Source of the DNA: Podarcis melisellensis
Taxonomy: Eukaryota
Length of the DNA: 64,000 nt
Strand: one strand, 5' to 3'
Assembly: GCA_964234715.1 (NCBI GenBank)
Contig: OZ174281.1
The notes under the pieces: model-generated
Told to the model about the DNA's origin: nothing
What the model saw: the letters and a program-made list of their open reading frames with translations, nothing else
Database searches by the model: none
Program-made: the position numbers and the translations under genes
In this document: positions 37,354 to 64,000 of the stretch, piece after piece
Position numbering within the stretch: the first letter of the stretch is position 1
How the letters are laid out: each line of letters begins with the position of its first letter

Positions 37354-39759
37354 CTGTATATTGGCTGAATCCCCATTACTGTTTGCAGTCTCTTCAGCAA
37401 TGAGAAAGGGATCATTTATCTCACAGGGCTGGTGACTGGTATTGGAAATATTTCCCTTGGGAAATCCGAAATTGCTCTTCCTAGAGTCTGTAGTGAGAGA
37501 AACCTCCTGGCAGTAGGAGTGCAGAAATGCTCGGACTCCGTCAATCCCCACAAACTGGGAAACTGGAACTCCACTAAACTTCTCAGTTCCAGACTGTGAA
37601 TATCTCCACCTATGAAGTTTAACTGCCAGTAACACAAGGAGGAAAGTGAAGAACAAGCAGGAGACAAAAGCCACTGCAAGGACCAGGTAGAAGGTGAGGT
37701 CAGACGGAGGCTCTACAGGAGCTGAGATGCTGCTCAGGTCTGAGAGGATTGCAGGGATGGTGTCAGCCAGCACCACAGTCAGAGTGGCTGAAGCAGAGAG
37801 AGGTGGCTGCCCATTGTCCTTCACTAAAACCACCAGGCTTTGCTTGAGGGCATCTTTCTCCAGAAAGAAGCGGGCCGTCCTGATCTCTCCCGTGTGGAGC
37901 CCCAGAGTGAAGAGCCCTGGCTCGGTGGCCTTGATCAGCTGGTAGGAGAGCCAGGCATTCTGGCCAGAGTCCGCATCCACGGCCACCACCTTAGTGACCA
38001 GGTAGCCTGGCTCAGAGGAGCGAGGGGCCAGCTCTATCCCCGTGGAGCCGTCAGTGGGAGGAGAGGGGTACAGGATTTGGGGAGCATTGTCATTCTGGTC
38101 CAGGATGAAGAGAGTCACTGAGACGTTGGAGCTGAGTGGTGGAGAACCTCCATCCTGGGCCTTGACCAGGAACTTAATCTCCCTCATCTCCTCATAATCA
38201 AAAGAGATCAAGCCATAGACAATCCCAGTCTCAGAGTTAATGGAGAGGAAGGAAGATACTGGGGAGTTACCGATGTTGTGCTCAGTGATGGAATAAGTGA
38301 CTCTGGAGTTCTCTCCACAGTCTGGATCATCAGCCTTCAAGGAAAATATGGAGGCCCCTCTTGGGTTGTTCTCCATTAAATACGAAGTATAAATGGATTG
38401 CAGGAAGTGTGGAGGGTTGTCATTTGTGTCTAAAATCTCAAGTGGAATAACAATTGATGTGGAAAGTGGAGGGGTCCCGTGATCCGTGACTGTGACAGTG
38501 ATGTTGTAGGCTGCCACCTGCTCTCTGTCCAGGGCTCTTGCTGTCACCAAACTGTAGTAGTTGCCATAGGCTTTTGTCAGTAGAAAGGGGAGGTTGCTGG
38601 GGATAGAACATGTGACTTCTGCATTCTCTGCCGAATCCTCATCTTGCACATTCAAAAGGGCTATTGCAGTCGCTGGTGGAGAGTTCTCATGGATGGAGCT
38701 GATAAGTGAAGTTATTTCCAGTTTGGGTGCATTGTCATTTACATCAGTAACAAATACTATGACAGTTGAAGTGTCAAATAGACCTCCACCATCACGGACC
38801 TGGACCTCAATTTCATGAAGAGCAGAGTCTTCGTAGTCTAAGCTTCCTATGAGAGTTAGCGCACCTTTGTGTGTATCTAAGTGAAATATCTGGGAAATCT
38901 TTTCCGTGATTTTTGCAAATGAAAATGTCATTTCTTTGTTGGTCCCTTCATCCAAATCAGTAGCTTTTAATGTAACCACAATGGTTCCTATAGGTAAATC
39001 CTCCCTTGCGCTCACTTCATAAATGTGTTGGCTAAAAATTGGTGCATTGTCATTCACATCCAGGACTGTAATTTGCAGCTGTGCAGTGCCACTCCTGACT
39101 GGATCACCACCATCATATGCGGTGATGATAAGATTATGAACTGCTTCTTTTTCATGGTCCAGAGGTCTTTCCAACACAATTTTTCCATATTGTTTGCCCT
39201 TAACTGATGTTTGGAGAATCAAAGAAAAATGGCTATTGTTGCTGAGTTTGTACCCCTGTAGAGAATTGTTTCCTAAATCAGGATCTTGAGCTTCCAAGAG
39301 GGGAAACTGGGACCCCAAAGCTGCATTCTCGCTGATATTTATCACTAATTTCTCTGACGGGAAGGTGGGCGCATGGTCATTGATATCTGTGACTTCCACT
39401 TCAACTCCATAAATTTTCATTGAATCTTCAACTATAATCTCAAAATTCAAAATACATTTCTCTTCCTGACCACAGATCTCCTCTCTGTCTATTCTCTTTG
39501 TGGTGTGCAAATGTCCACTCTTATAATTCAAAGCAAAATACTGAGTCCTACCTGGGGAAACAATGCGAATTCCACGATCTGAGAGCTCCTTTGCATCCAG
39601 TCCAAGATCTCTCGCAATATCCCCCACCAAAAAGCCTCTCTCAGTTTCTTCAGGAATGGAGTACTGGATCTGTCTGGTGATGGCTTGGCAGATGTTAGCA
39701 GACAGAAATAAAAAGAAAACTCTCCTTTTGCAAGCTTGAGGATACTTTGCTGTTGCCAT
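37354..39759 (-). CDS. Protocadherin gamma-A-like variable exon (802 codons)
   Basis: ORF 37339-39852 (track start is TTG; ATG at 39759, MATAKYP). [20 protein letters not shown] and [27 protein letters not shown] are gamma-A hallmarks; donor CAG|GTGAAG at 37354. Confidence 0.94.
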
Positions 39760-41786: not shown

Positions 41787-41816
<30 letters not shown>

Positions 41817-44872: not shown

Positions 44873-44937
44873 GGTTTTACTCCTACAAGGAGCAAGGTTG
44901 TGGTGCCTACATCACAGTTTCTGAAAGCAAAGCTTAC

Positions 44938-47367
44938 CTGCTCACCAACCTCCTCTTTGGCACTGGCATCCCCACAGTTGCCATCCACAAGAACCACCTG
45001 AGAGCTATCATTGCATAGCAAGTTTTCTGCCACCTGGATATGGGGTTTCGGGAAAGAGATCTGCTCTTTCCTCAACTCTGACGATAGGCAGAGTTGGTAG
45101 GAATAAGGTAAAGTTCCTTCTTCATAGTTTGGTGGAAATATGACCTGCGCCTTAGAAAAAGCATTAGGTTCGAAGCATTGGAATAATTTGGGATTTCCTG
45201 ATTGTCGAAGTTTCATGACAATGACCAGTATCACCGTCAGGAGGAACAAAAATGAGATACATGCCAAAGCCAGCACCAAGTAAAACTGGAGGTCAGAATG
45301 ATGTTCTGTGTCACTGGATTGCCTAGTCATTTCCGGAAGTGCCTCTTGGAAGTTCTCGGCAATCACAAGGTTGAGGACCACAGTAGCTGAGAGCGGAGCC
45401 TTCCCATTGTCCTTCACCAGGATGACCAGCTTCTGTTTCACAGCATCTTTCTCCAGAAGGGCTCGTGACGTCCTGATCTCTCCCGTGTGGGTCCCAATGG
45501 TGAAGAGGGCCGGCTCCGTGGCCTGCAGCACTTGGTAGGAGAGCCAGGCATTGTGCCCAGAGTCTCTGTCCACAGCCACCACTTTGGTCACTAGGTAGCC
45601 TGACTCTGCTGAGTGAGGAACCATCTCAAACAAGGCAGAGCCCTCGGCGCCCGTGAAAGGATACAGAACACGGGGGCTGTTATCATTCTGGTCCAAAATG
45701 TACACCCACACGGTGGCATTGTTGCTGAGAGAGGGAGAGCCGCCATCTTGGGCCTTCACTTGGATCTGAAACTCCCTGAATTGCTCATAGTCAAAGGAGC
45801 GCTGTGCATAGATAGTTCCCGTCTCAGAGTTAATGGAGACGTAAGAGGAGAGAGGCAGCTCCTCCATGTTGCTGTTGAGGATGGAGTAAGTGATACGTGA
45901 GTTGCGGTCCAGATCCGGGTCCGAGGCCTTGATGGAGAAAATGGAGGCACCTGAGGGATTGTTTTCAGGAACAAAGACACTGTAGGTTGATTTTTCAAAG
46001 GCAGGGGGGTTGTCATTGATATCTGAAATCTGCAGGGAGATGGTTTTGTTGGAGGAGAGAGGAGGGCTACCTTTGTCAGTGGCCGTGATTGTGATGTTGT
46101 ATCCTGAGGCTTTTTCTCTGTCCAAAGGACTGTCTGTAAGGATTTTGTAGTAGTTCTTTGAAGTTGACTCTATTTTAAACGGTATGTTACCTTGTAGATG
46201 GCATGTAATTTTTCCATTTTCTCCAGAATCTTTATCCTTTACGTTGATGAGAGCTATTACTGTTCCAGAAGCAGAGTCTTCAGGAACTGGACTAGATAAG
46301 GAGGCTAGAATGATCTCTGGAGCATTGTCATTCTCATCTAGAATCTTGATATCAACATTAGAGTGAGCCACTAATCCTCCTCCATCTCTTGCTTCAACTG
46401 CCATAGTGTACTTCTCTGTTTCTTCAAAGTCAAGAGCTTTCTTAATTGTAATTGTTCCACTTTGTGGATCTAGTTCAAATATTTGGTGGGCTGTTTCTGG
46501 GATGTTATTAAAAATATAACTAATATGTGCATTTAGACCTTCATCCCTATCAGAGGCTTTTACTTGGAGTATGGGGGACCCCACAGGAGAATTTTCCCTC
46601 AGGCTAACTGTATAAACTTTTTGAGTGAATACTGGTGGGTTATCATTGGCATCTGTGACGTTAATCCATATCTGGGCAGTCCCAGTTTTTCTGGGTTCAC
46701 CCCCATCCAGGGCCGTAAGGATCAACTGAAGTGAGTGCTCACTTTCCCGATCCAAAGATTTTTGCAGCACCAATTCTGTATATTTATGGCCATCTTCTCT
46801 CTGTAGTATGTCTAGAATGAAATAGTGATTTGGACTTAGCTGGTAATTCTGGAGAGAATTAATACCAATATCAGGATCTTCAGCTTTCCCAAGGAGAAAT
46901 CTGGCACCTGGTAATGTGGATTCAATTATTTGAAGCCCAATATTGCCCTTTATGAATTGTGGGGCATTATCATTAATGTCCTGAATTGCTACACTCACAT
47001 GGAAAACATTCAATGGCTTTTCCACCACAGCTTCAAAGTCAATAATGCAGTGTGTGCTCTCTCTACACATCCCCTCACGATCTAGCCTCTCATTCACATA
47101 CAGATTTCCATTTTCAGCACTGATAGTGAAATATGGCTTTTTACCTTCAGAAATGATATGCAGGTTTCTATTCCTCAGTTCTCTGGCATTTAGTCCCAGA
47201 TCCTTGGCAAGATTTCCCACCAAAGACCCCTTTGCCATCTCCTCAGGGATGGAATAGTGAACCTCTTCCAAAACTGCTCCACAGAACAAAGATGAAAATA
47301 TCAGAAGTGTTATATACCTTCCTGGTGTTTGAAAGCTCTCTCCATGAAGGATTCCTCTCATCTTCAT
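44938..47367 (-). CDS. Protocadherin gamma-B-like variable exon (810 codons)
   Basis: ORF 44770-47391 (track start is GTG; first ATG 47367); donor CAG|GTAAGC at 44938. Confidence 0.95.
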
Positions 47368-47653: not shown

Positions 47654-49441
47654 ATCTTTTCCCAGTGATTTTTCTTCCCTAATTCATGACATGGCATGGT
47701 GGTATTTATATTTAATGACTCAAACTATATTCTGATACAGGATATGTGAACCCTCTTCTGTTATAAAGCAGAAATATTTGTGTTTTGTTTGTGTTATCTT
47801 TTCACTAGTATTACAGGTAAAAAAAAATCAACTTCAAAGGAGTATTTGCAGTAAAGGACAAGCAATAAAAACATAGTATAGATTCATTTCCTCAATTTAA
47901 AGCACTTACAGTTTTTACCAATCTGTAAACCTCTCTAAGAGAAAAATTGAATTTCTCTAGTGGATTTCTCTATGAAGTGTTACGGTGTATAAAGAAAAAG
48001 ACGATGGGAGAATTGAGGAAATTATTTTATTCAAGGTTTTAAAAACCTCCAAGGAAGGAGAGATAGAATGATGGAATCTTACAGTTGGAGGTGACCCCAG
48101 GGGTCAACTAGTCCAACCCCCGGCAATGCAGGAATCTCAGTTAAAGCATCCATGGCAGATGGCCATCCAACCTCTGTTTATAAATTGAATTATGTGCAAT
48201 TCAAGTGTTCAATGTGCTTTAAGTGTCTTCAGCTGGTGTAGTGTAAGAAACAGAATAGTAATGCAGTTTATGTCCTGCATTTGGCATGAACTCAGCATGT
48301 TCCCTTAAGTAAGCCACATTTCCCTCAAGGCTCTTCCTGCAGTATGGGAATAATTGCACTAATGCTATATAATATTATACATTATAAGTATTATAACCTG
48401 GGAGGTAATGTAGCTGTTCTGACAAATCCTGGATATTTGAGGAACTTTATTCAGCTTTAGCTCCAGACTTAGCCTGCAATCTTTTGCACTGCGCTGGTGG
48501 TGGTAGGGTTTGGATTGGTTGGAGCTGTTCCTCAGCCAAGCCCTACCAGCCTCTACTGGCCTCTACCCATAGGGGGTCACTCTGCTGGGGCAGAATTGCC
48601 TGTTCCCTCTGCCAAATGTATGCTTGGTTAGAAGTCATGCCAGTGGGATCTCCACTCATGGCAGCTGATGAAAAATTCTGAAAGGGGACAAGGACAGGGA
48701 GAGACAGGAGCCAGTCCCACTACTGTCCCGTGGTGGCACTGGGCCTGATGTGGGTCTAAGTGAGGTGCCCCTCCACCTTCTGCCCAGACCAGCAGCAACG
48801 CTGCGGATGTGACAGTGGTCTCTTTGCTCTGTTATGCCTCACAACGCCCAAGCCAGGATTTGGATAACAGCCTTAGTCATGGTTATAGCTGATCCACAAA
48901 AATCAACGTGGTTTAACTCAGTAATAGCTCACTTGTCAAGTTGATTTCAATGCTTTGGCCACGTCTGGATCCAGCCCACTATATACATAACCCTAAATAA
49001 TACATATACCTTCCAAGATAGCCACAATTCGCATTTCTTCAGCAAAAGCAGTCTCTAAGCAGTTTACAACTATAAAATAAATATGATCAACCAGTTGTGC
49101 ATCTCCAGCTAAATAGCCAATATCCACGCTCTACTCTAGAAGACCACTGCCAATTAGTCTTGACCTGGTGGTGGATTTTATATCACACATACTGAAACAT
49201 GATTGATCTACACAATACAGGTAAAAAGAAAAAAGTGTGGTCTATGTTTGCTTCCACACCCCAGCATGAAGCCAAACACAGTTAATGGTTTTGTCTATGT
49301 GCCACAACTTATTTACTTACAAGTCTGATCTACATATGATTAAATAATACTACTTCTACAACCTCAGTGATGACATACTTAATGCCAAGATGGAGGCTAG
49401 GAACTGTCTTTTCTGCCAGACACATTAAACAGTTGTCGCCA

Positions 49442-49499
49442 TTCAATATTGATCCAATACTTGGACATTGTTGGGTCCAAGTATTGGATTAATATTGAA
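49442..49499. repeat. Inverted repeat, 25-bp arms with 8-nt loop (1 mismatch)
   Basis: TTCAATATTGATCCAATACTTGGAC-ATTGTTGG-GTCCAAGTATTGGATTAATATTGAA. Confidence 0.9.
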
Positions 49500-50613
49500 A
49501 CTGGTCTTTTCTCTTCAGTGCCCTCCCTCCCAGCTCCACTGAGTGCAAATGAGGACCTTTAGGTATCATCAGCTCTGAGCCAGTAAGTGCTACAGTCAAT
49601 GAGATCATCCGTACAGACGAATAATTGCCATCACCAGATTCTCCCAAATTAGTAAGAATACCATGGAGGTTGGTTTGGATAACTCTCCTTTCAGGTCTTG
49701 GGCTGCTCACTATAGGATTCTTATGTTTTCTAACCTACATAGCACTTGCCAATTGTGGCACATTTAAAAAGAATGGCTGGGGTCCAAATACAGCCAGTCT
49801 TTAATTACTGACTGCCTAGCAGATGAGAAAGCTCCTGTCATTCATCCTCTCATTTGGCCAATTTAGCAACAAGAACAAAATACTACCATTCAGCCCCAGT
49901 TGGGAACTGATAGATCCTGCCTTGTTTGAAGCTAGAAGGAGAAGGCCAGATACTGCCATGCCAAAACAGAGGCCTAGAGATGGTGCCACCATGCCCACGC
50001 CAACTGTCCACAGAGGCAGCGTTGAGAACATGCTGCACAATTTACACCTCCAAAAGATTAAAGTAAAAGCATCTTCTGTGGAGTTCAAAGATACACATAA
50101 AAATGTTGCATCCACATTACACATGACCTCCTACATTAAAACAATGGGTTAAGCATTGCATCCAGTGCTCAATTAAATACCAACAATTTGATCAGTGAAA
50201 TCCAATCTGCACTGTTAAATGAAACAGGGAAACTCTAGATCTGAGGCATGATGTCAAAGTACTTTGTACAATGTTCTTCAACATGAACCACAAGTAGCCT
50301 ATTCAGACTTTTGTAAGGACTCTAGTATATCTGAAATTAACATCATTTTAGACCTAGTGAAGCCATATCATATTATTTTAAATCCAGGTAGCTACAACGC
50401 ACTACTGGTGAAAAATGATACATTGTACTCCAATAATTCAATGTTGTAGTTGACCATTCTTGATTTAAAAGGAAAGAAGGGGGCTATGATTATAAAATAG
50501 AAGCACCAGCACATTGCTCCCACCCCATGTCATGAAATGAGAAGAAAATAATTATCTTCCTCATTTACTATATTATTTAATGTTCAAGCTACTTATGCTG
50601 GAAAGCTGAAATA

Positions 50614-50864
50614 CAATTGTACTTTGGATCCCGAACACCCTGGAACTCGGACATTTTGGCTCCCGAATGCTGCAAACCCGGAAGTGATTGTTCTGGTTTG
50701 CAAAAAAAATTTGGGAACCTGAATGTCTGATGGTGGTTCTGAGACTTCTGATTGGCTGCAGGAGCTTCCTACAGCCATTCAGAAGCTACAATTTGGTTTT
50801 CAAAGGTTTTGGAAGTCAAACGGACTTCCAGAATGGATTCTGTTTGACTCCCAAGGTAGGACTG
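50614..50864. mobile_element. Degenerate Tc1/Tigger-like MITE
   Basis: Imperfect TIRs CAATTGTACTTTGG / CCAAGGTAGGACTG, TA on the left. Confidence 0.55.
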
Positions 50865-51374
50865 CACAATCTGGGAGTAAGCCCTATTGAACTCAATAGC
50901 ACACAACTGCCATACAGAAAGAAGTACACCTCCGCAATTATATAATAAAAACGTCAGCACATTCCACACCCACTCATAAGATTAAATAAGCAATATATAT
51001 ATCCATTTCACTTCATTTAATTTCATGTCCCCACTATTCAAATTCCAAAGCTTAAATCCTAAGCACTCTTACCTGACAAAAAGTCACACTGAATTCAACA
51101 GGACTCACATCTGGGTAGATATGGTTAGGATTGAACTAGAAATCTCAAAATGCAATGGAGAAAATAGACCATACCTGCAACAGGTAGTTTAGCCTCAGCT
51201 GTTTACTATATATAAAGAAGATGATGATTCATGAATCTAGATGGAAAATTAAATAAAGTCTGAAAAATTAAAAGGCAAGTACATATGATGTATAAAAGGT
51301 TGTATTGAAATGTCACTTAACGGTAAAGAACTACAGAGTGTACCATGCATGTAACTGCAGAGAACAAATCTTAC

Positions 51375-53795
51375 CTCTTCACCATTAGCCATCTCAGAAA
51401 GAAAATTGTTTCCACTGTTGCCTGTAAAAGGAACACTAGGTTTCTCACTGCCAAGAATATTGTCTACCATCTGAACACTGGGTGTCAGGAAGGCAAACTC
51501 GTTCTTCCTGGTCTCAGAAGATAGACACAGCTGGTAGGAATAGGGCAAAGTCCCATCTTCAAAGTTGGGTGGGAAGATGGCACCATTCTTGGAATGGGGA
51601 ACAGGACCAAAGCACTGTAGGAACCTGGGATGCCCTGACTGACGGAGCTTCATTGTAATGGCCAGAATCACGGTCAAGAGGAACAAGAAGGAGATCACAG
51701 CTAAGGCCAGCACCAAGTAGAACTGCAGGTCAGACTGATACTCTGAGCTGCTGGGTTGGCTCTTCATTTCCGGAAGGGCCTCCTGAAAGTTCTCAGCAAA
51801 CACCAGGTTCAGAGTCATGGTGGCCGAGAGAGACGGCTGCCCGTTATCCTTCACCATAATGACCAGTCTCTGTTTCACAGCGTCTCTCTCCACAAAGGCC
51901 CTGGCTGTCCTGATCTCTCCAGTATGAGAACCAACCGTGAAGAGTGCTGGCTCAGTGGCCTGAGTCAGGTGGTAGGAGAGCCAGGCGTTGTGTCCAGAAT
52001 CTGCATCCACGGCCACCACCTTGGTGACAAGATAATCTGCCTCGGCCGAACGAGGCACCATCTCAAACAAGGCTGAGCCCTTGGCTTCTTGTGAGGGGGA
52101 CAGGATACGAGGGCTGTTATCATTCCTGTCAAGAACAAACACCCTGACGGTCACATTGCTGCTGAGAGGGGGAGAACCCCCATCTTGGGCCTTCACTTGC
52201 ACCCGAAACTCTCTGAATTGTTCATAGTCAAAGGATCTCTGGGCATAGATGGTGCCGGTCTCAGAATTAATGGAGATATAGGAGGAGATGGGAAGCTCCT
52301 CGATGTTGCTGTTGAGTATGGAGTATGTGATCCGTGAGTTCTGGTCAATGTCGGGATCAGAGGCTTTGATGGTGAAAGTGGAGGCACCTGAAGGATTGTT
52401 TTCTGGCACATAGATGCTGTAGGATGATCTCTGAAATGTAGGGGCATTATCATTGATATCTGAGATCTGTAGTGAGATTGTTTTGTGTGTGGAAAGAGGT
52501 GGAGTTCCTCTATCAGTGGCTGTGATTGTAATATTATATGCAGGAGCTATTTCTCTGTCCAAAGGGCTGACTGTCAGAAGTTTGTAGAAATTGTTAGATG
52601 AGGAAATAATCTTGAAGGGCAAATCACTGTTTAAATAGCAGGTAACTTTTCCATTATCACCAGCATCTTTGTCATTTACATTGATTAGAGCAATTAAGGT
52701 TTCAGATGGTGAATCTTCAGGAACAGGGCTGAACATGGAGGTTAAGGTCACATCTGGGGCATTATCATTCTCATCAAGAACCCTTATCTCAATATTACAA
52801 TGAGTCACCAATCCTCCGCCATCTTTTGCAGCAACCGTCATAGTATATTCATCGTTGTCCTCAAAATCCAGTCGCTCCAAGAGGGTGATTACGCCACCAA
52901 TGGGATCTAGACTGAATTTCTCTTGGGAAGTTGCTGGTATGTTGCTGAAATGATACCTGATTTGGGCATTTGTACCTTCATCCTTATCAGAGGCTGCAAC
53001 CTGGAGCACCGTGGATCCAATAGGAGCATTTTCACTCAAACTGACCTTGTACACCTCTTGAGTGAAGACAGGCGGGTTGTCATTGGCATCGGTGATATTA
53101 ATCCGTATCTGGGCTGTTCCACTTTTCCTAGGCTCACCCCCATCCATAGCGGTAAGTACTAAGTGAAGGTTCTGCTCTTTTTCCCGATCCAAAGATTTCT
53201 GCAACACCAGTTCTGCATATTTATTTCCATCTTTTCTCTCTCTAACTTCCAAATTGAAGTACTGATTGGAGCTCAGCTGGTAATCCTGGAGAGAGTTCAC
53301 CCCAATGTCAGGATCTTCCGCTTTCCCAAGGAGAAATCGAGTGCCTAGCAGAGTGGATTCAAGGATCTCTAAATTGATATTGCTATTCAGGAACTGGGGT
53401 GCATTATCATTAACATCCTGGATTTCTACTGTGACATGGAAAACATTCAGCGGGTTTTCTACCACAACTTCAAACTGAACAAAGCAAAGTGGATTTTTGC
53501 CACATATCCCCTCCCTATCAATCCTGTCATTTACATAGAGGTTTCCATTCTCTGCATTGATACTGAAATGCTGCATTTTAGCCACAGACACAGTGTGCAG
53601 ATTGCGATGTTTTAGCTCTTTGGTGCTCAGTCCCAGGTCCTTGGCGAGTTTCCCCACAACGGAACCCTTTGCCATCTCCTCAGGGGTTGAATAATGAATC
53701 TGCTCTGATGCAGCCCAACAGGTAAAAGACAATAGAGAGAGAAGCAGTACTTGCCTTGTGAGTGCCCTGCCATTCCCTGGGTGCCTTCTCTCCAT
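51375..53795 (-). CDS. Protocadherin gamma-B-like variable exon (807 codons), probable chimera
   Basis: ORF 51249-53795; donor GAG|GTAAGA at 51375; 5' part nearly identical to the 30.8-kb exon. Confidence 0.95.
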
Positions 53796-54063
53796 CTGGC
53801 TGGTTCTCTCAAAAACAGGCTGCTTCCTTTTCTCAGTTTCCTATGCTTAAGCTCTCACAGTGATGAAGGAAACAACATGAGGTATCACTGAGGAAGAATA
53901 AATTGCCCTTGTTCTCATATGTGTGCAAAGCAAAGGAGATTTTTCCTTCTCTGCAAGAGTTCCCTGTCTCTGTGCTCTTCAGTTGGCCTGCTCTGAATAG
54001 CAGTGATGGGAGTTACTGTAGTCTAGGAAGCATCACTACAGTATCCTCTCTCTGGCTCTCATA

Positions 54064-54105
54064 CTGGCCAACACTGACACTTGGAGGACTACTGAAGGAA
54101 CTGCA
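54064..54105 (-). promoter_or_regulatory. CSE/CTCF element, CAGT variant (duplicate of 33461)
   Basis: Identical to 33461-33502. Confidence 0.75.
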
Positions 54106-54360
54106 AGGAAAACCATGTTCACCATAACATAGAAAGATGGAACTGAAAGAATTTACATGTTTCTACAATGTGAACTTTCTCTTTAGCCAACTGCAAGTGG
54201 GGCATTTGAAAAAGCTTTCCCTTGTTTCACCTTTGTTTAGCATATTTATTACTAATTACTTTTATTGTCCACAGCTTCAGCAACAAAGGCTTCCAGGGTG
54301 GGGTACAGGTCCAAAACAGCAATATAAATAAAACAAAAATAAAACAAACTACACTCATAA

Positions 54361-54540
54361 TAGAGACCAACTAAGTTTGTTATTGGTATGAGCTTTCGTG
54401 TGCATGCACACTTCTTCTTCGTGCATGCACATGAAAGCTCATACCAATAACAAACTTAGTTGGTCTCTAAGGTGCTACTGGAAGGAATTTTTTTATTTTG
54501 TTTCAAGTACAGCAGACCAGTACAGCTACCTACCTGTAAC
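54361..54540. mobile_element. Penelope-like palindromic remnant (duplicate), with a 15-bp flanking direct repeat
   Basis: AACTACACTCATAAT at 54347-54361 and 54538-54552. Confidence 0.6.
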
Positions 54541-55064
54541 TACACTCATAATGTTTGGTTGTGAATAGATTTCATTTATTTTCTAACTGGCCTCAATCCA
54601 GCTCCCTTTCAAAATGGGATTGGTGACTCTGGCAGATTTTCATTATTCCCCTTACACATACATGCAAAAGAAGCACAAACTATCCCTTTTTAAATGCAGT
54701 GGAAGGCCCTTTGAGATACTAGGTGTGGATAAATTTCTGGATAATTCCCCCCCCCCCCTCACTCAGTTCCCTTCAGCAACAAAGTGAAGAATGGACTCTC
54801 TTTTCCCTGCTCAGTAACCTCAGTTCATGGTAGATGTGGGCAGAGATGGCAGTTAGCATTTTGCAGACATATTCAAGGGAAGATTCCTCTTTTGCCTTCC
54901 TTGTCAATAATGGGTGTAGCTTCTTCATGCACTAGGACTTTGACTGAGGAGGCTGCAGCTCCCAGAGGAGGCCAGTGGCTCTCTCCAAGGTCTTCAGCAA
55001 AGGGGTCAGAAGACAGCAGAGGAACACAGAGGCTAGAGTTACTTTCAGTGGCTTTTTAGATAGT

Positions 55065-55475
55065 ACTGTGAAAATTGAGATTGCATCTGGGACTGTAGTT
55101 TCGCTTACATGAAGATGATACTCATATCCACTTTTTATTGGTAATATGGTGATATTGTTTTTATATATACTTGTGTACAGTTATAACCAGTATATTTAAC
55201 CTTCCCCCACCATATTACATATCTGTGTTGCACAAATAAACTGTGCCATTAATTTGAAGCAGAGAATTGAATCCTGTCATGGTAAACAGTGTGGGGTGGT
55301 TTCATGGTTTGAAAGTTCCTTTATCACCAGTAGTTGTTGATCCTTGATGATACTTCCAAGTGAAGAGCCTTCCTCCACTTCCTCAGGGAATAAGTGGCAA
55401 ATCCTCAAGGATTGGTAATGACTTGCCAATGTTAACAGATAAAAGAGACAGAGTGATAAAAGAATTGTAAGTCTA
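55065..55475 (-). pseudogene. Duplicate of the decayed protocadherin 5' relic
   Basis: Homologous to 34460-34870 (…ICHLFPEEVEEGSSLGSIIKD…). Confidence 0.62.
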
Positions 55476-56400
55476 AGGTGTTAGAAGGGAGATCTTCTGA
55501 TTCTGAGGTATAAATAGGATCAACGTGAGCAATTTTGTTAGCAGGTTTTATTGAAAATATGCCACAGTGGTCTTTAGGAGGTAGCTTGCTTTGCGTGGTG
55601 GGGATAGATTGAGTTATAACTTCCTGTCAACAGCTAAAACAATCCTGCGTGGCACCCCCATGCAATTTCAGCTAACAAGGAAACTCTCTTTGCTGCTCCT
55701 AAGACATATCATAGAAATGCAAACGGGCCTTGTGCCATGTTCAGACATATTCAACAAAAGCCTGACATTCTTTATAAAGTTATCTAACTCCATCCAGAAC
55801 TGAAAGATTTTCATTGCTCTCATAGTTTCTCTCATTCATATTTCAGAAAGTTTTTTTTAATCATATAAAATACAAGGATGATAAATATACAATTACATAT
55901 GGCTTGAGCTAACTGGAGGCAACTATAGCAGGACACACATCAAAACTACCCCGCTCCCACCGTTGGGACTTTGCAGAGTTATGTGGCCACTGCCAGATCC
56001 ACAGCCCTGCTGTTCACATTAGCCATAGCAGAATATGGAGATCCAGAATGACCTGGTCCGAGTCTGTTGCATGACTGCAGCAAGACCGGCTCAGGATACA
56101 ACAGTCACTGGGCCAGCTCAGCCATGGCCCTGCTCTCAGAATGACCCATTTGGGGCTCTCCATTGGCTCCTGCACACCCAGCAGGTAGAAGGTGATGTCA
56201 GCTGAGCCGAGAGAGCCAGGCAGAGGGACGTCTCTGCCTAATCCAACTCCGTTCCCTGGCTCAGTGGAAATGGGGGTTGGATTGCTTTGTGTATCATCAC
56301 TGGCTTATTAAAATACCTGTCTGACCTCTTTAGACTCTCAGATGATGCCAAATATTATTGCTCAAAATGTGAAATAAATTTGCCCTGTTATAATATCCTA

Positions 56401-56741
56401 CTTGAGAGTCCCATGGACTGCAAGAAGATCAAACCTATCCATTCTGAAGGAAATCAGCCCTGAGTTCTCACTGGAAGGACAGATCATGAAGCTGAGGCTC
56501 CAGTACTTTGGCCACCTCATGAGAAGAGAAGATTCCCTGGAAAAGACCCTGATGTTGGGAAAGATGGAGGACACAAGGAGAAGGGGATGACAGAGGACGA
56601 GATGGTTGGACAGTGTTCTCAAAGCTACCAGCATGAGTTTGACCAAACTGCGGGAGGCAGTGGAAGACAGGAGTGCCTGGTGTGCTCTGGTCCGTGGGGT
56701 CACAAAGAGTCGGACACGACTAAACGACTAAACAACAACAA
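56401..56741 (+). mobile_element. Bov-B/RTE 3' end (duplicate of 35789-36129)
   Basis: Identical ORF translation and TSD. Confidence 0.92.
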
Positions 56742-56944
56742 TATCCTACTACACTAATATTTAACGCACCATTGTTTTCTATATGATGAAATTCTGGGAG
56801 ACTGAACCAAGGGAAGGGAAAGGGCAGGAAGCCATTCCCCACTGGCAGAGACAATACTTGGCCATTATATGGCACTTCTGAGTGTTAGGCCAGTGTTATT
56901 TATTGCACTGGTATTACAGATTTGCAGCTGAGAATGAGAAAAAA

Positions 56945-57141
56945 TGATGTTGGGAAAGATGGAGGGCACAAGGAGAAGGGGATGACAGAGGATGAGATGG
57001 TTGGATGTTGTTCTTGAAGCTACCAGCATGAGTTTGACCAAACTGCGGGAGGCAGTGGAAGACAGGAGTGCCTGGCATGCTCTGGTCCATGGGGTCACGA
57101 AGAGTCGGACACGACTAAACAACTAAACAACAACAACAACA
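56945..57141 (+). mobile_element. Bov-B/RTE 3' end cut by a deletion breakpoint (corresponds to 43110-43302)
   Basis: Starts abruptly at TGATGTTGGGAAAG; only the 3' TSD half ATAATAGCCCACA remains. Confidence 0.9.
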
Positions 57142-58780
57142 TAATAGCCCACAAGATGCAAATTCCCCCAATTAATTAATTTCATTAAATTTTCATCTTA
57201 CGGTCTTTCCCACAACACAACACAGCAGACCCATCCACAGAATTCCATTCCATAAAAACGTAAGAACAGTCCTACTGAATCAAACCAATGGCCTATGCAG
57301 TCAAGCATCCTGTCTCCCACAGTGGCTGACCAGATTCCTCTCAGAAGCTCCATTCTTGGACCACAGCAACTAAAATCAGAGGCACAATGCCTCTGGGACT
57401 AGAGGTAATATTGTCACCATGACTACAAACCAGTGATGGCTTTATCCACCATAAATTTCTCTATTAAATTTACATCTTGCCACTTTTCCTGTAGGAGCCC
57501 TCATATGATCTAAAGTCACCATATTCTCCTTAAAGCCACCAAGTTGGTGGTGATCACTGCATCTTGTAGTAGCAAATTCCATAGCTGAACTATAAGGTGA
57601 ACTATAACTTACATTGTTATAAAGAACAAAGAAACATAACATAAGAAGAAGCCTGCAATATTGGCCCAAAGGTGGAGCTTGTCCAGCACTCATGGAGGCC
57701 AACCAGAAGCCCATGGGAAGCCCCCAAGCAGAACATGTCACAACAGCACTGCCACCACCTGTGATTCCATGAATCTCATACTCACAGGCATATAGATAGC
57801 CTCTGGCGGTGGAGGCAGAACCTAGACATCATGGTTTGTAGCCATGGAATTTGTGCAAACCGCTTTTAAAGCCATTCAGGCTGTGGGCTATCACAGCCTC
57901 TTGTTAGTTATGAGAGAGAGAAAAAACTTTTCTATTTCTGCATTTGCCATGCCATGCTGAAATCTATTCCTCTCAATTATGTCCTTCCTTATTTGCCTTT
58001 TCTCCCCTAAACTTAAAAATCCGAAACGTCACAACCTTTCCTCATAGGGGAATTACTCCACCCACCTCTCGTTGTGCTTGCCCTTTCCTGAACATTCTTC
58101 AGTTTTATTTTTAATTCCTTTCCTAACAATCTCTACCATGGTTTTCACCTTTTCCACATCTGTTTTACACTGTGTCAATATCTTCATCGAGCTATCCACT
58201 ATGACTCCAGGATCTTGTTCCTAGTCAGTCACCACTGATGACAAAATATGTGAAAAAAAGATTTCTTTGCACTTTCTTAAATGGGGTCTTACATTGAATT
58301 GTTGTTACCTTATTATTGATATCTACATCAGTACGGAAAACTCAGATTCACTGCACTCTTCCGTTTCATTCATAATTACTAGAAGTTAAACCATAACAAG
58401 ATCAAGACTCACCTGAACATCATTTTCAGCTACAGCATTGAAGATGCCCCTGCCATTGCAACTTGAAGGCTACTTGTAAAAAATGTACTCTACATTATGA
58501 ACAGCAGGTTCTAGTAATATAATTTCATGTTTTTTTGGTTCTCTCATTTACTAAACCAGGTAGGTAAGAGGAAGACAAATTAAAAATATTAGTTTTACTC
58601 AGTGCAATTTGTCTAGGCAAAGAGGCGCCTAATTTGTTCTCTTATAATGGCAAAAGAGACTACCTGAGAGATGCCAGAACTGAGTTCTGGTGCGTTCTGA
58701 CTGAAATAAAGGTCTGGTTTTACTCCTACAAGGAGCAAGGTTGTGGTGCCAACATCACAGTTTCTGAAAGCAAAACTTAC

Positions 58781-61210
58781 CTGCTCACCAACCTCCTCTT
58801 TGGCACTGGCATCCCCACAGTTGCCATCCACAAGAACCACCTGAGAGCTATCATTGCATAGCAAGTTTTCTGACACCTGGATATGGGGTTTCGGGAAAGA
58901 GATCTGCTCTTTCCTCATCTCTGACGATAGGCAGAGTTGGTAGGAATAAGGTAAAGTTCCTTCTTCATAGTTTGGTGGAAATATGACCTGCGCCTTAGGA
59001 AAAGTATTAGGTTCGAAGCATTGGAATAATTTGGGATTTCCTGATTGTCGAAGTTTCATGACAATGACCAGTATCACCGTCAGGAGGAATAAAAATGAGA
59101 TCAATGCCAAAGCCAGCACTAAGTAAAACTGGAGGTCAGAATGATGCTCTGTGTCACTGGATTGCCTAGTCATTTCTGGAAGTGCCTCTTGGAAGTTCTC
59201 GGCAACCACAAGGTTGAGGACCACAGTAGCTGAGAGCGGAGCCTTCCCATTGTCCTTCACCAGGATGACCAGCTTCTGTTTCACAGCATCTTTCTCCAGA
59301 AGGGCTCGTGACGTCCTGATCTCTCCCGTGTGGGTCCCAATGGTGAAAAGGGCCGGCTCTGTGGCCTGAAGCACTTGGTAGGAGAGCCAGGCATTGTGCC
59401 CAGAGTCAGTGTCCACAGCCACCACTTTGGTCACTAGGTAGCCTGGCTCTGCCAAGTGAGGAACCATCTCAAACAAGGCAGAGCCCTCGGCACCCGTGAA
59501 AGGATACAGAACACGAGGGCTGTTATCGTTCTGATCCAAAATGTACACCCACACGGTGGCATTGTTGCTGAGAGAGGGAGAGCCGCCATCTTGGGCCTTC
59601 ACTTGGATCTGAAACTCCCTGAATTGCTCATAGTCAAAGGAGCGCTGTGCATAGATAGTTCCCGTCTCAGAGTTGATGGAGACGTAAGAGGAGAGAGGCA
59701 GCTCCTCCATGTTGCTGTTGAGGATGGAGTAAGTGATACGTGAGTTGCGGTCCAGATCCGGGTCTGAGGCTTTGATGGCAAAAATGGAGGCACCTGAGGG
59801 ATTGTTTTCAGGCACAAAGACACTATAGCTTGATTTTTCAAAGGCAGGGGGGTTGTCATTGATATCTGAAATCTGCAGGGAGATGGTTTTGTTGGAGGAG
59901 AGAGGGGGGCTACCTTTGTCGGTGGCCGTGATTGTGATGTTGTACTCTGAGGCTTTTTCTCTGTCCAAAGGACTGTCTGTGAGGATTTTATAGTAGTTCT
60001 TAGATGTTGACACTATTTGAAATGGTACATTACCTTGTAGATGGCATGTAAGTTTTCCATTTTCTCCAGAATCTTTATCCTTTACGTTGATGAGAGCAAT
60101 TAGTGTTCCAGAAGCAGAGTCTTCAGGAACTGGACTAGATAAGGAGGCCAGAATGATCTCTGGAGCATTGTCATTCTCATCTATAATCTTTATATCAACA
60201 TTACAGTGAGCCACTAATCCTCCTCCATCTCTTGCTTCAACTGTCATAGTGTACCTCTCTGTTTCCTCAAAGTCAAGAGCTTTTTTAATTGTAATTGTAC
60301 CACTTTGTGGTTCTAGTTCAAATATTTGGTGGGCTGTTTCTGGGATGTTATTAAAAATATAACTAATATGTGCATTTAGACCTTCATCCCTATCAGAGGC
60401 TTTTACTTGGAGTATGGGGGACCCCAGAGGGGAATTTTCCCTCAGGCTAACTGTATAAACTTCTTGATTGAAGACTGGTGGGTTGTCATTGGCATCTGTG
60501 ACATTAATCCATATCTGGGCAGTCCCAGTTTTTCTGGGTTCACCCCCATCCAGGGCCGTAAGGATCAACTGAAGCGAGTGCTCACTTTCCCGATCCAAAG
60601 ATTTTTGCAGCACTAATTCTGCATATTTATGGCCATCTTCTCTCTGTCGAATCTCTAGAATGAAATAGTGATTTGGACTTAGCTGGTAATTCTGGAGAGA
60701 ATTAATCCCAATATCAGGATCTTCAGCTTTCCCAAGGATAAATCTGGCACCTGGTAATGTGGATTCAATTATTTGAAGCCCAATATTGCCCTTTATGAAT
60801 TGTGGGGCATTATCATTAATGTCCTGAATTGCTACACTTACATGGAAAACATTCAATGGCTTTTCCACCACAGCTTCAAAATCAATAATGCAGTGTGTGC
60901 TCTCTCTACACATCCCCTCACGATCTATCCTCTCATTCACATACAGGTTTCCATTTTCAGCATTGATAGTGAAATATGGCTTTTTACCTTCAGAAATGAT
61001 ATGCAGGTTTCTGCTCTTCAGTTCTCTGGCATTTAGTCCCAGATCCTTGGCAAGATTTCCCACCAAAGACCCCTTTGCCATCTCCTCAGGGATGGAATAG
61101 TGAACCTCTTCCAAAACTGCTGCACAAAGCAAAGATGAAAATATCAGAAGGGTAATATGCCTTCCTGGTGTTTGAAAGCTCTCTCCATGAAGGATTCCTC
61201 TCATCTTCAT
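58781..61210 (-). CDS. Protocadherin gamma-B-like variable exon (810 codons), recent duplicate of the 44.9-kb exon
   Basis: ORF 58613-61234 (first ATG 61210); donor CAG|GTAAGT at 58781. Confidence 0.95.
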
Positions 61211-61449
61211 TTTCCTCTTCTCTTTGATGAGCACAGGATTTCAGATTTCCACCAAGACAGGAGATTTTTTTGCCCAGTAAAAAAAGAACTGGATCCTTTG
61301 GCTTAATTTGTATATGCTGCAGTATTTTCTGTTTTCCAGCTGAAACGTTTGTTCCAGCGTCTGCTGGTATTCCCGATGTGCAGTTTGGGACAAAGAGATC
61401 TCTCTGCAGAAAGCATCAGTGGAACTTCAGCTGCCCTTGGGTTGCCGCC

Positions 61450-61491
61450 TTGTCCAACAGTGACACTGTGAGTCTGAAACTGAGAACTGCA
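61450..61491 (-). promoter_or_regulatory. CSE/CTCF element, CACT variant (duplicate of 47612)
   Basis: Identical to 47612-47653. Confidence 0.78.
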
Positions 61492-63290
61492 ATCTTTTCC
61501 CAGTGATTTTTCTTCCCTAATTCATGACATGGCATGGTGGTATTTATATTTAATGACTCAAACTATATTCTGATACAGGATATGTGAACCCTCTTCTGTT
61601 ATAAAGCAGAAATATTTGTGTTTTGTTTGTGTTATCTTTTCACTAGTATTACAGGTAAAAAAAAATCAACTTCAAAGGAGTATTTGCAGTAAAGGACAAG
61701 CAATAAAAACATAGTATAGATTCATTTCCTCAATTTAAAGCACTTACAGTTTTTACCAATCTGTAAACCTCTCTAAGAGAAAAATTGAATTTCTCTAGTG
61801 GATTTCTCTATGAAGTGTTACGGTGTGTAAAAAAAGACGATGGGAAAATTGAGGTAATTATTTTATTCAAGGTTTTAAAAACCTCCAAGGAAGGAGAGAT
61901 AGAATGATGGAATCTTACAGTTGGAAGTGACCCCAGGGGTCAACTAGTCCAACCCCCTGCAATGCAGGAATCTCAGTTAAAGCATCCATGGCAGATGGCC
62001 ATCCAACCTCTGTTTATAAATTGAATTAAGTGCAATTCAAGTGTTCAATGTGCTTTAAATGTCTTCAGCTGGTGTAGTGTAAGAAACAGAATAGTAATGC
62101 AGTTTGTGTCTTGCATTTGGCATGATCTCAGCATGTTCCCTTAAGTAAGCCACATTTCCCTCAATGCTCTTCCTTCAGTATGGAAATAATTGCACTAATA
62201 CTATATAATATTATACATTATAAGTATTATAACCCGGGAGGTAATGTAGCTGTTCTGACAAATCCTGGATATTTGAGGAACTTTACTCAGCTTTAGCTCC
62301 AGACTTAGCCTGCAATCTTTTGCACTGCGCTGGTGGTGGTAGGGTTTGGATTGTTGGAGCTGTTCCTCAGCCAAGCCCTACCAGCCTCTACTGGCCTCTA
62401 CCCATAGGGGGTCACTCTGCTGGGGCAGAATTGCCTGTTCCCTCTGCCAAATGTATGCTTGGTTAGAAGTCATGCCAGTGGGATCTCCACTCATGGCAGC
62501 TGATGAAAAATTCTGAAAGGGGACAAGGACAGGGAGAGACAGGAGCCAGTCCCACTACTGTCCCGTGGTGGCACTGGGCCTGATGTGGGTCTAAGTGAGG
62601 TGCCCCTCCACCTTCTGCCCAGACCAGCAGCAACGCTGCGGATGTGACAGTGGTCTCTTTGCTCTGTTATGCCTCACAACGCCCAAGCCAGGATTTGGAT
62701 AACAGCCTTAGTCATGGTTATAGATGATCCACAAAAATCAATGTGGTTTAACTCAGTAATAGCTAACTTGTCAAGTTGATTTCAATGCTTTGGCTCTATG
62801 TATGGCCAAGTCTGGATCCAGTCCACTATATACATAACCCTAAATAATACATATACCTTCCAAGATAGCCACAATTCACATTTCTTCAGCAAAAGCAGTC
62901 TCTAAGCAGTTTACAACTATAAAATAAATATGATCAACCAGTTGTGCATCTCCAGCTAAATAACCAATATCCACGCTCTACTCTAGAAGACCACTGCCAA
63001 TTAGTCTTGACCTGGTGGTGGATTTTATATCACACATACTGAAACATGATTGATCTACACAATACAGGTAAAAAGAAAAAAAAGTGTGGTCTATGTTTGC
63101 CTCCACACCCCAGCATGAAGCCAGACACAGTTAATGGTTTTGTCTATGTACCACAACTTATTTACTTACAAGTCTGATCTACATATGATTAAATAATACT
63201 ACTTCTATAACCTCAGTGATGACATACTTAATGCCAAGATGGAGGCTAGGAACTGTCTTTTCTGCCAGACACATTAAACAGTTGTCGCCA

Positions 63291-63348
63291 TTCAATATTG
63301 ATCCAATACTTGGACATTGTTGGGTCCAAGTATTGGATCAATATTGAA
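63291..63348. repeat. Perfect inverted repeat, 25-bp arms with 8-nt loop
   Basis: TTCAATATTGATCCAATACTTGGAC-ATTGTTGG-GTCCAAGTATTGGATCAATATTGAA. Confidence 0.92.
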
Positions 63349-64000
63349 ACTGGTCTTTTCTCTTCAGTGCCCTCCCTCCCAGCTCCACTGAGTGCAAATG
63401 AGGACCTTTAGGTATCATCAGCTCTGAGCCAGTAAGTGCTACAGTCAATGAGATCATCCGTACAGACGAATAATTGCCATCACCAGATTCTCCCAAATTA
63501 GTAAGAATACCATGGAGGTTGGTTTGGGTAACTCTCCTTTCAGGTCTTGGGCTGCTCACTATAGGATCCTTTTGCTTTCTAACCTACATAGCACTTGCCA
63601 GTTGTGACACATTTAAAAAGAATGGCTGGGGTCCAAATACAGCCAGTCTTTAATTACTGACTGCCTAGCAGATGAGAAAGCTCCTGTCATTCATCCTCTC
63701 ATTTGGCCAATTTAGCAACAAGAACAAAGTACTACCATTCAGCCCCAGTTGGGAACTGATAGATCCTGCCTTGTTTGAAGCTAGAAGGAGAAGGCCACAT
63801 ACTGCCATGCCAAACAGAGGCCTAGAGATGGTGCCCACCCCAACTGTCCACATAGGCAGCGTTGAGAACATGCTGCACAATTTACACCTCCAAAAGATTA
63901 AAGCAAAAGCGTCTTCTGTGGAGTTCAAAGATACACATAAAAAGGTTGCATCCACATTACACATGACCTCCTACATTAAAACAATGGGTTAAGCATTGCA

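What the first reader, a model, noticed from the sequence alone, without database searches (positions are those of the whole stretch)
51375..53795. Probable chimeric Pcdh-gamma isoform made by unequal crossover inside EC2
Seen: this exon and the 30.8-kb exon are near-identical over kilobases of promoter, the signal peptide, EC1 and the first part of EC2. Identity drops at ~53222/32616 ([17 protein letters not shown] vs [17 protein letters not shown]), stays patchy through EC3 and early EC4, and the exon ends and downstream introns are unrelated. Known: cPcdh homophilic specificity depends on antiparallel EC1:EC4 and EC2:EC3 contacts. Inference: crossover between two older paralogs X (30.8 kb) and Y duplicated ~20.6 kb and left a hybrid with X promoter, EC1 and EC2a joined to Y EC2b-EC4. 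That would give a new or cross-reacting recognition code in one step.
Basis: partly seen in the sequence, partly recalled or inferred. Interest (0 to 1): 0.72.

Follow-up and report, generated by a model that had tools for sequence, protein, structure and literature searches.

The report
Old protocadherin exon, recently re-duplicated
This lizard protocadherin-gamma exon looks like a fresh hybrid of two genes, but the same patchwork is present in three other lacertid genomes, so it is an old gene caught in an ordinary recent block duplication and not a new recognition code.

Summary
The exon at 51375-53795 (minus strand, "H") is an intact clustered protocadherin gamma-b variable exon. Against the exon at 30769-33189 ("X") it is a four-part mosaic:
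- promoter, signal peptide, EC1 and the start of EC2: 94-100% identical
- EC2b-EC4a core (53343-52580): about 84%
- last 125 nt: 87%; introns unalignable

The same mosaic, with the same boundary, separates the H and X orthologues of Podarcis lilfordi, which lacks the long duplication. P. raffonei DNA and Zootoca proteins show it too, and Lacerta agilis DNA does for H. So the EC2 break is the old edge of a tract kept uniform by gene conversion. It is not a fresh crossover scar, and H encodes no new code.

After the split from P. lilfordi, at least 12.6 kb was copied: the H-downstream spacer, exon e44 (as e58) and X's upstream DNA, minus 6.8 kb holding e37. The copy joins an H-type body somewhere in 53916-53343, and only the last 50 nt of that interval lie in EC2. 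The parental H exon predicted at about 65.2-67.6 kb lies outside the window and could not be read.

Earlier notes of this scan describe similar events elsewhere in this cluster. This is an ordinary case of a known process.

The parts
51375..53795 (-). Variable exon H (wH): 807 codons covering signal peptide, EC1-EC6, transmembrane segment and a short cytoplasmic stub. Splice donor GAG|GTAAGA.
   Evidence: ORF and translation. Pfam Cadherin_2, five Cadherin stretches and Cadherin_C_2. Donor sequence. EC linkers at aa 127, 236, 341, 446 and 556.
53343..53916 (-). Interval that must hold the recent junction: last ~120 nt before the ATG, signal peptide, EC1 and the first ~17 codons of EC2. H and X have no fixed difference in it.
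   Evidence: Sites fixed between H and X orthologues of two Podarcis species: wH is X-type at 53921 and 53916, H-type from 53343 on, and none lie between. The tree of the coding head is an unresolved star.
52580..53343 (-). Non-homogenised specificity core (EC2b, EC3, first half of EC4), H-type. About 16% from X and 3.5-6.3% from the H orthologues.
   Evidence: Distance matrix. H clade supported 100/99 and X clade 100/100. dS 0.48 against 0.05-0.09 in the flanking parts.
51500..52579 (-). Homogenised EC4b-EC6, transmembrane and proximal cytoplasmic tract. Paralogues are as alike as orthologues, and GC3 is raised.
   Evidence: wH-wX 2.3%, wH-plH 3.6%, tree unresolved. GC3 0.58 against 0.38-0.47 elsewhere. 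The other subfamily (e16, e24, e44, e58) rises to 92-100% at the same alignment column.
49318..51499 (-). H-type exon tail (51375-51499) and H-type downstream intron. Orthologous to the intron after H in P. lilfordi, and unrelated to X's intron.
   Evidence: Window 54119-49318 matches the P. lilfordi H block at 95%. Tail and intron distances. Tail tree.
53917..56947 (-). X-type upstream DNA: the upper part of the proximal promoter plus 2.8 kb of distal upstream. It is a lineage-specific copy of 33311-36335.
   Evidence: Self-alignment. Tiles map only to the upstream region of P. lilfordi X. wH carries the X state at nearly all informative sites above 54100. wH and wX promoters are sisters, support 96/95.
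56945..64000 (-). Copy of 43110-50160: the spacer downstream of H, exon e58 (58781-61210, a copy of e44) and its downstream spacer. The match runs off the window end.
   Evidence: 96.9% over 7 kb. Tiles map to the P. lilfordi H-B2 spacer and to B2, not to Y-B1 or B1. Three-way site counts: sites where the two window copies agree against P. lilfordi number 94-106, against 12-26 private to one copy.
56945..56947 (.). Deletion junction in the upper copy. The equivalents of 36336-43109 (6.8 kb, with the gamma-a-like exon e37) are missing. The break lies inside one copy of a 344-nt repeat, so it is not a simple repeat-by-repeat recombination.
   Evidence: Pairwise BLAST of the three pieces. The P. 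lilfordi, P. raffonei and L. agilis loci all have the e37 orthologue between B2 and X.
30769..33189 (-). Variable exon X, the paralogue whose upstream DNA was copied. Orthologue of P. lilfordi P0016 and of P. raffonei L004:23385.
44938..47367 (-). Variable exon e44 (B2 orthologue), the source copy of e58.
37354..39759 (-). Variable exon e37 (gamma-a-like). Present only in the lower copy of the block.

Best explanation
H is an old gamma-b variable exon. Its orthologues sit in the same place (B1-H-B2-A-X) in Podarcis lilfordi, P. raffonei and Lacerta agilis, and an H-type protein exists in Zootoca.

H and its paralogue X have been kept nearly identical over two tracts by recurrent gene conversion:
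- a head: about 0.3 kb of proximal promoter, the signal peptide, EC1 and the first 17 codons of EC2
- a body: EC4b to the cytoplasmic stub

The EC2b-EC4a core, the last 125 nt and the introns have diverged freely (core dS about 0.5). This is the usual clustered-protocadherin pattern.

After the split from P. lilfordi, non-allelic recombination between the identical heads of X and H made a tandem duplication. The unit is 20.6 kb in the lower copy. In the upper copy it is 13.8 kb, after loss of 6.8 kb that held e37. The H copy in the window therefore sits behind X-type upstream DNA and a copy of e44 (e58).

Shown: the mosaic, its age, the lineage-specific copy and the junction interval. Inferred: the recombination mechanism, and a surviving parental H exon at about 65.2-67.6 kb.

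Because H and X do not differ in the junction interval, the protein is unchanged. The outcome is one or two extra near-duplicate isoforms and a swapped distal promoter context, not a new adhesion specificity.
For: Mosaic identity:
- Described.
- The same mosaic separates the P. lilfordi pair, which has no long duplication. Window against P. lilfordi: promoter 2.9% vs 4.1%, head 3.2% vs 2.8%, core 16.2% vs 16.7%, tract 2.3% vs 3.7%, tail 12.8% vs 15.2%.
- dS for head, core and tract is 0.095, 0.48 and 0.053 in the window, and 0.090, 0.51 and 0.074 in P. lilfordi.

Age of H and X:
- Orthology clades for core and tail have 100% support. The coding head gives a star tree.
- H-type and X-type proteins with the same head occur in P. 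lilfordi and Zootoca, and H-type ones also in P. raffonei and L. agilis.
- Gene order is conserved in three genomes.
- P. raffonei H and X share a species-specific signal-peptide change, which points to concerted evolution.

Recent duplication:
- Window 64000-54400 maps to the P. lilfordi H-B2 spacer, then B2, then X upstream.
- Junction interval 53916-53343.
- The two copies are sisters relative to P. lilfordi.
- Contigs of an independent run hold both upstream versions.

Literature: homogenised EC1 and EC4-6 beside diverse EC2-3, and tandem duplication by unequal crossover, are described for these clusters (PMC4978886, PMC1852091, PMC4151104).
Against: - The parental H exon and the B1 orthologue, which the tandem-duplication model puts beyond 64000, were not seen. 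The window ends 1.2 kb short of the decisive stretch.
- The reads test was inconclusive. Only short Logan contigs were available. The two haplotypes of the H-downstream intron in organism A have summed depth of about 1.2-1.3 times baseline, which fits two alleles as well as two loci.
- X-upstream divergence between the two copies (3.1%) is close to the divergence from P. lilfordi (3.5-4.3%), so the timing is less clear there than in the B2 flanks.
- In the core tree wH falls outside plH, prH and laH. This is probably the effect of short conversion patches, which was not resolved.
Confidence: 0.7

Rival explanations
1. A single unequal crossover inside EC2 between X and an older paralogue Y, which had a different EC1 and promoter, created a new chimeric protein (X EC1-EC2a plus Y EC2b-EC4) and so a new or cross-reacting code in one step.
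For: X-type upstream is joined to an H-type core, tail and intron. The identity drop lies in early EC2. EC2 is at the 3' limit of the allowed junction interval.
Against: - The same EC1-EC2a plus H-type core combination occurs in P. lilfordi, P. raffonei, L. agilis and Zootoca.
- The P. lilfordi H/X pair has the same boundary without the duplication.
- No fixed H/X difference exists in 53916-53343, so any junction there is silent.
- Identity returns to 98-100% after mid-EC4, which a single crossover does not explain unless homogenisation is added.
Confidence: 0.05
2. Replacement without a gain in copy number. A long-tract conversion, a template-switching event, or a duplication followed by loss overwrote B1, its flanks and H's own upstream with a copy of the H-B2 spacer, B2 and X upstream. 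No second H exon lies beyond the window.
For: In the window e58 occupies the position that B1 holds in the other species, and the exon order visible in the window matches theirs. The upper copy carries a non-homologous 6.8-kb deletion, which shows the region has had more than one simple event. No second H copy was seen directly.
Against: A tract of 13 kb or more is far longer than usual conversion tracts (my own knowledge). The copy begins with DNA that normally lies just downstream of H, as a tandem duplication predicts. Organism A shows two versions of the H-downstream intron.
Confidence: 0.17
3. Assembly artefact: a false tandem duplication or a misjoin within the identical head tract.
For: The junction lies in 573 nt that carry no fixed difference between the paralogues. 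The window has two N gaps. The source reads of the assembly were not available.
Against: The copies differ by 1.6-3.1%, with private changes on both. The upper copy has its own deletion. Contigs of another run match the upper copy's upstream exactly at 54053-54253 and 55272-55442, and a second variant is present as well. A haplotype duplicate would not join X upstream to an H body.
Confidence: 0.05

Closest known systems
Regional gene conversion (concerted evolution) in clustered protocadherin variable exons (Noonan et al. 2004, as cited in PMC4978886 and PMC2764143; fugu, PMC1852091; Xenopus and mouse, PMC4978886)
   Same: EC2-EC3 escape homogenisation and carry the diversity. EC4/5-EC6 and, in some groups, EC1 are kept nearly identical among paralogues, synonymous sites included. 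GC3 is raised in the converted tract, as reported for fugu.
   Different: Here the 5' homogenised tract also covers about 0.3 kb of promoter and ends at a sharp boundary 17 codons into EC2. That boundary is shared by at least three lacertid genera. The one published lizard study (anole, PMC2764143) reported little conversion in gamma-b. This lacertid pair has a dS ratio of about 9 between core and tract.
Lineage-specific tandem duplication of protocadherin variable exons by unequal crossover (PMC2764143 for anole gamma-b expansion; PMC4151104 for the mechanism and an engineered mouse duplication)
   Same: [quoted passage not shown] The duplicates keep intact ORFs and promoters. The event is specific to one lineage.
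   Different: The junction can be narrowed to 573 nt inside a variable exon's homogenised head, so the junction exon is hybrid in its upstream DNA but unchanged in protein. The upper copy later lost 6.8 kb with one exon.
Antiparallel EC1-EC4 trans dimer of clustered protocadherins (review PMC7811963, citing Rubinstein 2015, Nicoludis 2015/2016 and Goodman 2016)
   Same: H and X differ in EC2b, EC3 and EC4a, the part of the EC1-EC4 interface where isoform differences are concentrated.
   Different: No structure or binding assay was done here. EC1 is identical between H and X, so any difference in specificity between them must come from EC2-EC4. That is an inference.

Membership tests
Clustered protocadherin gamma (gamma-b type) variable exon | One large exon of about 2.4 kb encoding a signal peptide, six cadherin repeats, a transmembrane segment and a short cytoplasmic stub | tested here: met
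   2421-nt ORF. Pfam Cadherin_2, Cadherin in five stretches, and Cadherin_C_2. Five DxNDNxPxF-type linkers.
Clustered protocadherin gamma (gamma-b type) variable exon | Ends in a 5' splice donor that joins it to shared constant exons | tested here: inconclusive
   A GT donor follows codon 807. Full-length relatives of 941 aa carry Cadherin_tail. RNA reads of a related organism stop at the exon end.
Clustered protocadherin gamma (gamma-b type) variable exon | Sits in a tandem array of like exons on one strand, upstream of C-type exons | tested here: met
   Seven variable exons on the minus strand, plus a C-type exon at 3-2222. The order matches P. raffonei L004.
Clustered protocadherin gamma (gamma-b type) variable exon | Closest annotated relatives are gamma-b isoforms | tested here: met
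   Best hits are 'protocadherin gamma-B5-like' of Zootoca, Podarcis, Lacerta and anole gamma b.
   No fixed H/X difference exists in the junction interval or in EC1. The head tree is a star. Orthologues already carry the same combination.
   The P. lilfordi, P. raffonei and L. agilis H orthologues have the same head, core and tail but their own upstream DNA.
Tandem segmental duplication by non-allelic homologous recombination | Two adjacent copies in direct orientation, with the junction in a tract of high identity shared by the two parent sites | tested here: met
   Direct copies at 96.9% and 94.7%. The junction lies in the homogenised head at 53916-53343.
Tandem segmental duplication by non-allelic homologous recombination | The parental copy of the junction exon is still present at the far end of the upper unit | not testable with these tools
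   It is predicted at about 65,210-67,630, beyond the window. The window's ORFs are not on record in the contig collection, and the reads were inconclusive.

The most novel reading that the evidence does not exclude
In lacertids the gamma-b exons may behave as three exchangeable modules: a promoter-EC1 head, an EC2b-EC4a core, and an EC4b-TM body plus tail. The module boundaries would be fixed and sharp (codon ~152 and codon ~405) and conserved across genera for tens of millions of years. The homogenised modules would then act as built-in recombination sites that repeatedly seed block duplications and head or flank swaps. The evidence so far is the shared boundary in three genera, a P. muralis model with an H/X head on a B-type body, and earlier notes of this scan on other parts of the cluster. 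If true, conversion would be much stronger here than was reported for anole gamma-b.
Probability: 0.3. Interest if true: 0.4.

Novelty: new member of a known kind. Interest (0 to 1): 0.2.

Why it matters
The finding matters mainly as a caution. In protocadherin clusters, a sharp drop in identity between neighbouring paralogues is usually the edge of a gene-conversion tract. It is not the scar of the event that duplicated them. Comparing one or two related genomes settles the question.

The locus does give a clean, datable example of how these clusters grow. Recombination within a homogenised tract adds whole exons with their promoters and leaves the coding sequence of the junction exon unchanged. 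This fits the idea that repertoire growth comes first and divergence follows (PMC4151104).

It also hints that lacertid gamma-b exons are homogenised more strongly than the published anole analysis found.

Tried and rejected
- Reading beyond 64000. Exact look-ups of the window's e58 and H ORFs found no record. The findings index does not accept places beyond the window.
- Testing for a second H copy with reads. Only Logan contigs of a few hundred bases were available, two high-copy repeats (50597-50990, 54340-54536) swamp the tables, and summed depths are not copy numbers. The two-haplotype signal in the H-downstream intron is suggestive only.
- Finding a donor for the divergent core inside the window. 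No other window exon is closer than about 80% to either core, so a patch converted from a neighbour in the window was rejected.
- My first reading, a recent full copy of X with a later conversion patch in EC2-EC3. I dropped it once the P. lilfordi orthologues showed that the core difference is old.
- Simple recombination between the two 344-nt repeats as the cause of the 6.8-kb loss. This was rejected because the upper copy keeps one whole repeat plus part of the other.
- Positive selection as the cause of core divergence. Pairwise dN/dS is about 0.25, which gives no support.
- Species identity. No protein is 100% identical to a window exon, the P. muralis entries included. The genome is Podarcis-like: the C-type exon is 99.6% identical in protein to P. 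raffonei's.
- Noonan et al. 2004 is not held in the library, so it is cited only through papers that describe it.
- The N runs were left untouched.

Full report
**What is in the window**

All protocadherin exons lie on the minus strand, so transcription runs from high to low coordinates. There are seven long ORFs. Call them e58, H (51375-53795), e44, e37, X (30769-33189), e24 and e16. A C-type exon is cut by the window start at 3-2222.

H and X are each 2421 nt, intact, and end at GT donors. Pfam finds the N-terminal cadherin-like domain, five further cadherin repeats and the protocadherin cytoplasmic stub. The best database relatives are "protocadherin gamma-B5-like" proteins of lacertid lizards: Zootoca and Podarcis lilfordi at 95% (the latter over 95% of the query) and Lacerta agilis at 90%. 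The genome is a Podarcis-like lacertid. No entry is 100% identical.

**Checking the observation**

A self-comparison shows a segmental duplication, not just two similar exons. 30766-36335 matches 51372-56947 at 94.7%. 43110-50160 matches 56945-64000 at 96.9%, and this second match is cut off only by the window end. The upper copy lacks the equivalents of 36336-43109, which hold e37.

Identity between H and X in 100-nt steps, and on a codon alignment, runs as follows:
- 94-100% from 56957 down to about 53350
- 72-90% from there to about 52580
- 98-100% from 52580 to about 51530
- 81% and then 62% in the last 100 nt
- noise in the introns

At nucleotide level the drop starts sharply at 53343, about codon 152. 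The EC linkers place the divergent island in EC2b, EC3 and the first half of EC4.

**A control inside the window**

The other subfamily behaves the same way. e16 is 61-74% identical to e24 and e58 through EC1-EC4a. It rises to 92-100% at the very alignment column where H and X recover, and falls again after EC6. There is therefore a cluster-wide homogenised tract starting in mid-EC4. Near-identity there says nothing about recent common descent.

**Relatives**

Alignment with lacertid proteins shows two old gene lineages.
- H-type cores with H-type tails occur in P. lilfordi (P0012), P. raffonei (P0121), L. agilis (P0129) and Zootoca (P0008, P0136).
- X-type cores with X-type tails occur in P. 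lilfordi (P0016) and Zootoca (P0135).
- All of them carry the same EC1-EC2a head.

I fetched the loci. P. lilfordi has the order Y, B1, H, B2, A, X, B3. P. raffonei has H, B2, A, X, B3 and an e16-type exon. L. agilis has B1, H, B2, A. This matches the window's e58, H, e44, e37, X, e24, e16.

In P. lilfordi the similarity between paralogues covers only the exon and about 330 nt upstream, apart from one further ~800-nt spacer match. There is no long non-coding duplication.

**The decisive comparison**

The P. lilfordi H/X pair differs region by region almost exactly as the window pair does:

| Region | Window pair | P. lilfordi pair |
|---|---|---|
| Promoter | 2.9% | 4.1% |
| Coding head | 3.2% | 2.8% |
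| Core | 16.2% | 16.7% |
| Tract | 2.3% | 3.7% |
| Tail | 12.8% | 15.2% |
| Introns | unalignable | unalignable |

Synonymous divergence tells the same story. It is 0.09 in the head, 0.48-0.51 in the core and 0.05-0.07 in the tract. GC3 is 0.58 in the tract against 0.38-0.47 elsewhere.

Trees with eight sequences give H and X clades with 100% support for the core and for the tail. For the coding head they give an unresolved star of all Podarcis and window H and X sequences.

P. raffonei H and X even share a species-specific signal-peptide change.

The mosaic is therefore old and is maintained by regional gene conversion. The published pattern for these clusters is the same: EC2-EC3 escape conversion, while EC4-6 and sometimes EC1 are homogenised (PMC4978886, PMC1852091).

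**What is recent**

Tiling the window against P. lilfordi shows that 64000 down to 57200 corresponds to the spacer downstream of H, then B2 and its downstream spacer. 57200 down to 54400 corresponds to X's upstream region. The exon body and the intron below it correspond to H. The lower copy, 50400 down to 33600, is collinear with P. lilfordi.

So the DNA in front of H in this genome is a copy of what lies between H and X, minus 6.8 kb. Three-way site counts put the two window copies together against P. lilfordi in the B2 flanks: 94-106 sites where they agree against it, and 12-26 private to one copy. The signal is less clear in X upstream. The event therefore post-dates the split from P. lilfordi. 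The spacers of P. raffonei and L. agilis are also of the short, ancestral kind.

**The junction**

I used sites that are fixed between the H and X orthologues of two Podarcis species. H in the window has the X state at 54122-54120, 53921 and 53916, and the H state from 53343 onward. No diagnostic site lies between. The proximal promoter of H is sister to that of X, with support 96/95.

The junction therefore lies in 53916-53343. Only the last 50 nt of that interval are EC2. Because the parents do not differ there, the junction is silent in the protein.

**Mechanism and its limits**

The simplest reading is non-allelic recombination between the identical heads of X and H. Such a crossover copies everything between the two heads in tandem. 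It predicts the parental H exon at about 65,210-67,630, with its own upstream DNA, and then B1. The window stops 1.2 kb short of that stretch.

I could not reach it. Contigs of public runs were too short to settle the matter. They do show three things:
- One organism holds both versions of the upstream stretch. One version is identical to the window.
- The same organism holds two versions of the H-downstream intron.
- RNA of a related organism covers the exon on the expected strand and stops at its donor.

A replacement event without a gain in copy number, or an assembly error, remains possible but less likely.

Other notes (s1-498325, s1-505005, s1-515105) describe similar crossovers and conversion patches further up the same cluster. 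These are leads, not evidence.

**Verdict**

The break in EC2 is ancient, however. The exon is the orthologue of an old gene, and no new recognition code was made. This is an ordinary instance of known protocadherin cluster dynamics.

Noticed in passing
window 3-2222 (minus strand); N run 4473-4608: A C-type gamma variable exon, cut by the window start, is 99.6% identical in protein over 740 residues to the first C-type exon of P. raffonei (L004:51877-54387). The region is GC-rich (0.52-0.60), unlike the gamma-b exons.
   Followed up: partly
window 16081-18627, 24525-26957, 44938-47367, 58781-61210: Exons e16, e24, e44 and e58 share an EC4b/EC5-EC6 tract at 92-100% identity while their EC1-EC4a parts are 61-74% alike (e16 against the others). 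For e16 the tract ends before the transmembrane segment. This is much stronger regional homogenisation than the published anole gamma-b analysis reports (PMC2764143).
   Followed up: partly
window 44880-47366 vs 58723-61209: The recently duplicated exons e44 and e58 differ more (3.5%) than their non-coding flanks (1.6-2.8%). About 44 private changes lie on each copy.
   Followed up: partly
window 35789-36132, 42961-43304, 56401-56744: A 344-nt repeat is present twice in the lower copy and once in the upper copy, plus a partial copy at 56945-57136. About 100 nt of it also occurs upstream of the Y exon in P. lilfordi. Its nature was not determined.
   Followed up: partly
window 50597-50990 and 54340-54536: Two very high-copy elements, with contig word depth of 10^4-10^6 in three lizard runs and many loose ends and joints. 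They are probably transposon fragments in the H-downstream intron and in the X-type upstream DNA.
   Followed up: no
window 52950-52999 (H codons ~266-282, EC3): A short stretch where H in the window carries the X-type version ([13 protein letters not shown]), as does Zootoca H. P. lilfordi H and an L. agilis exon carry another version (..EGSYAQIRYYF). It looks like a short conversion patch that crosses gene and species lines, and it may explain why wH falls outside the other H sequences in the core tree.
   Followed up: partly
protein P0111 (Podarcis muralis A0A670IJV3): A P. muralis gene model has the H/X-type head (95-96% over residues 41-165) joined to a body of the e24/e44/e58 type. It is either a head swap across subfamilies or a faulty model.
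   Followed up: no
L004:3297 and L004:23385 (P. raffonei H and X): Both paralogues carry the same species-specific signal-peptide change (SLLSLTCW where the other species have SLLSFTCW). This is direct evidence of concerted evolution of the head within one species.
   Followed up: partly
window 51079, 51131, 51138, 51170 (H-downstream intron): Run X1 (organism A) holds two versions of this intron. One is like the window. The other matches P. raffonei at all four sites and is the only version in organisms B and C. They may be two loci or two divergent alleles.
   Followed up: partly
window 41296-41374 and 41787-41868: Perfect (CTTC)n and (CTT)n microsatellites lie in the spacer upstream of e37, in the segment that the upper copy lacks.
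   Followed up: no
plx 2920-5340 (P. lilfordi exon Y, OX395132.1): A third member of the subfamily is itself a mosaic relative to H: promoter 1.6% from H, coding head 8%, core 14.6%, tract 2.9%, tail 7%. This suggests an older Y-B1 / H-B2 block duplication followed by conversion of H's coding head by X, or the reverse.
   Followed up: partly
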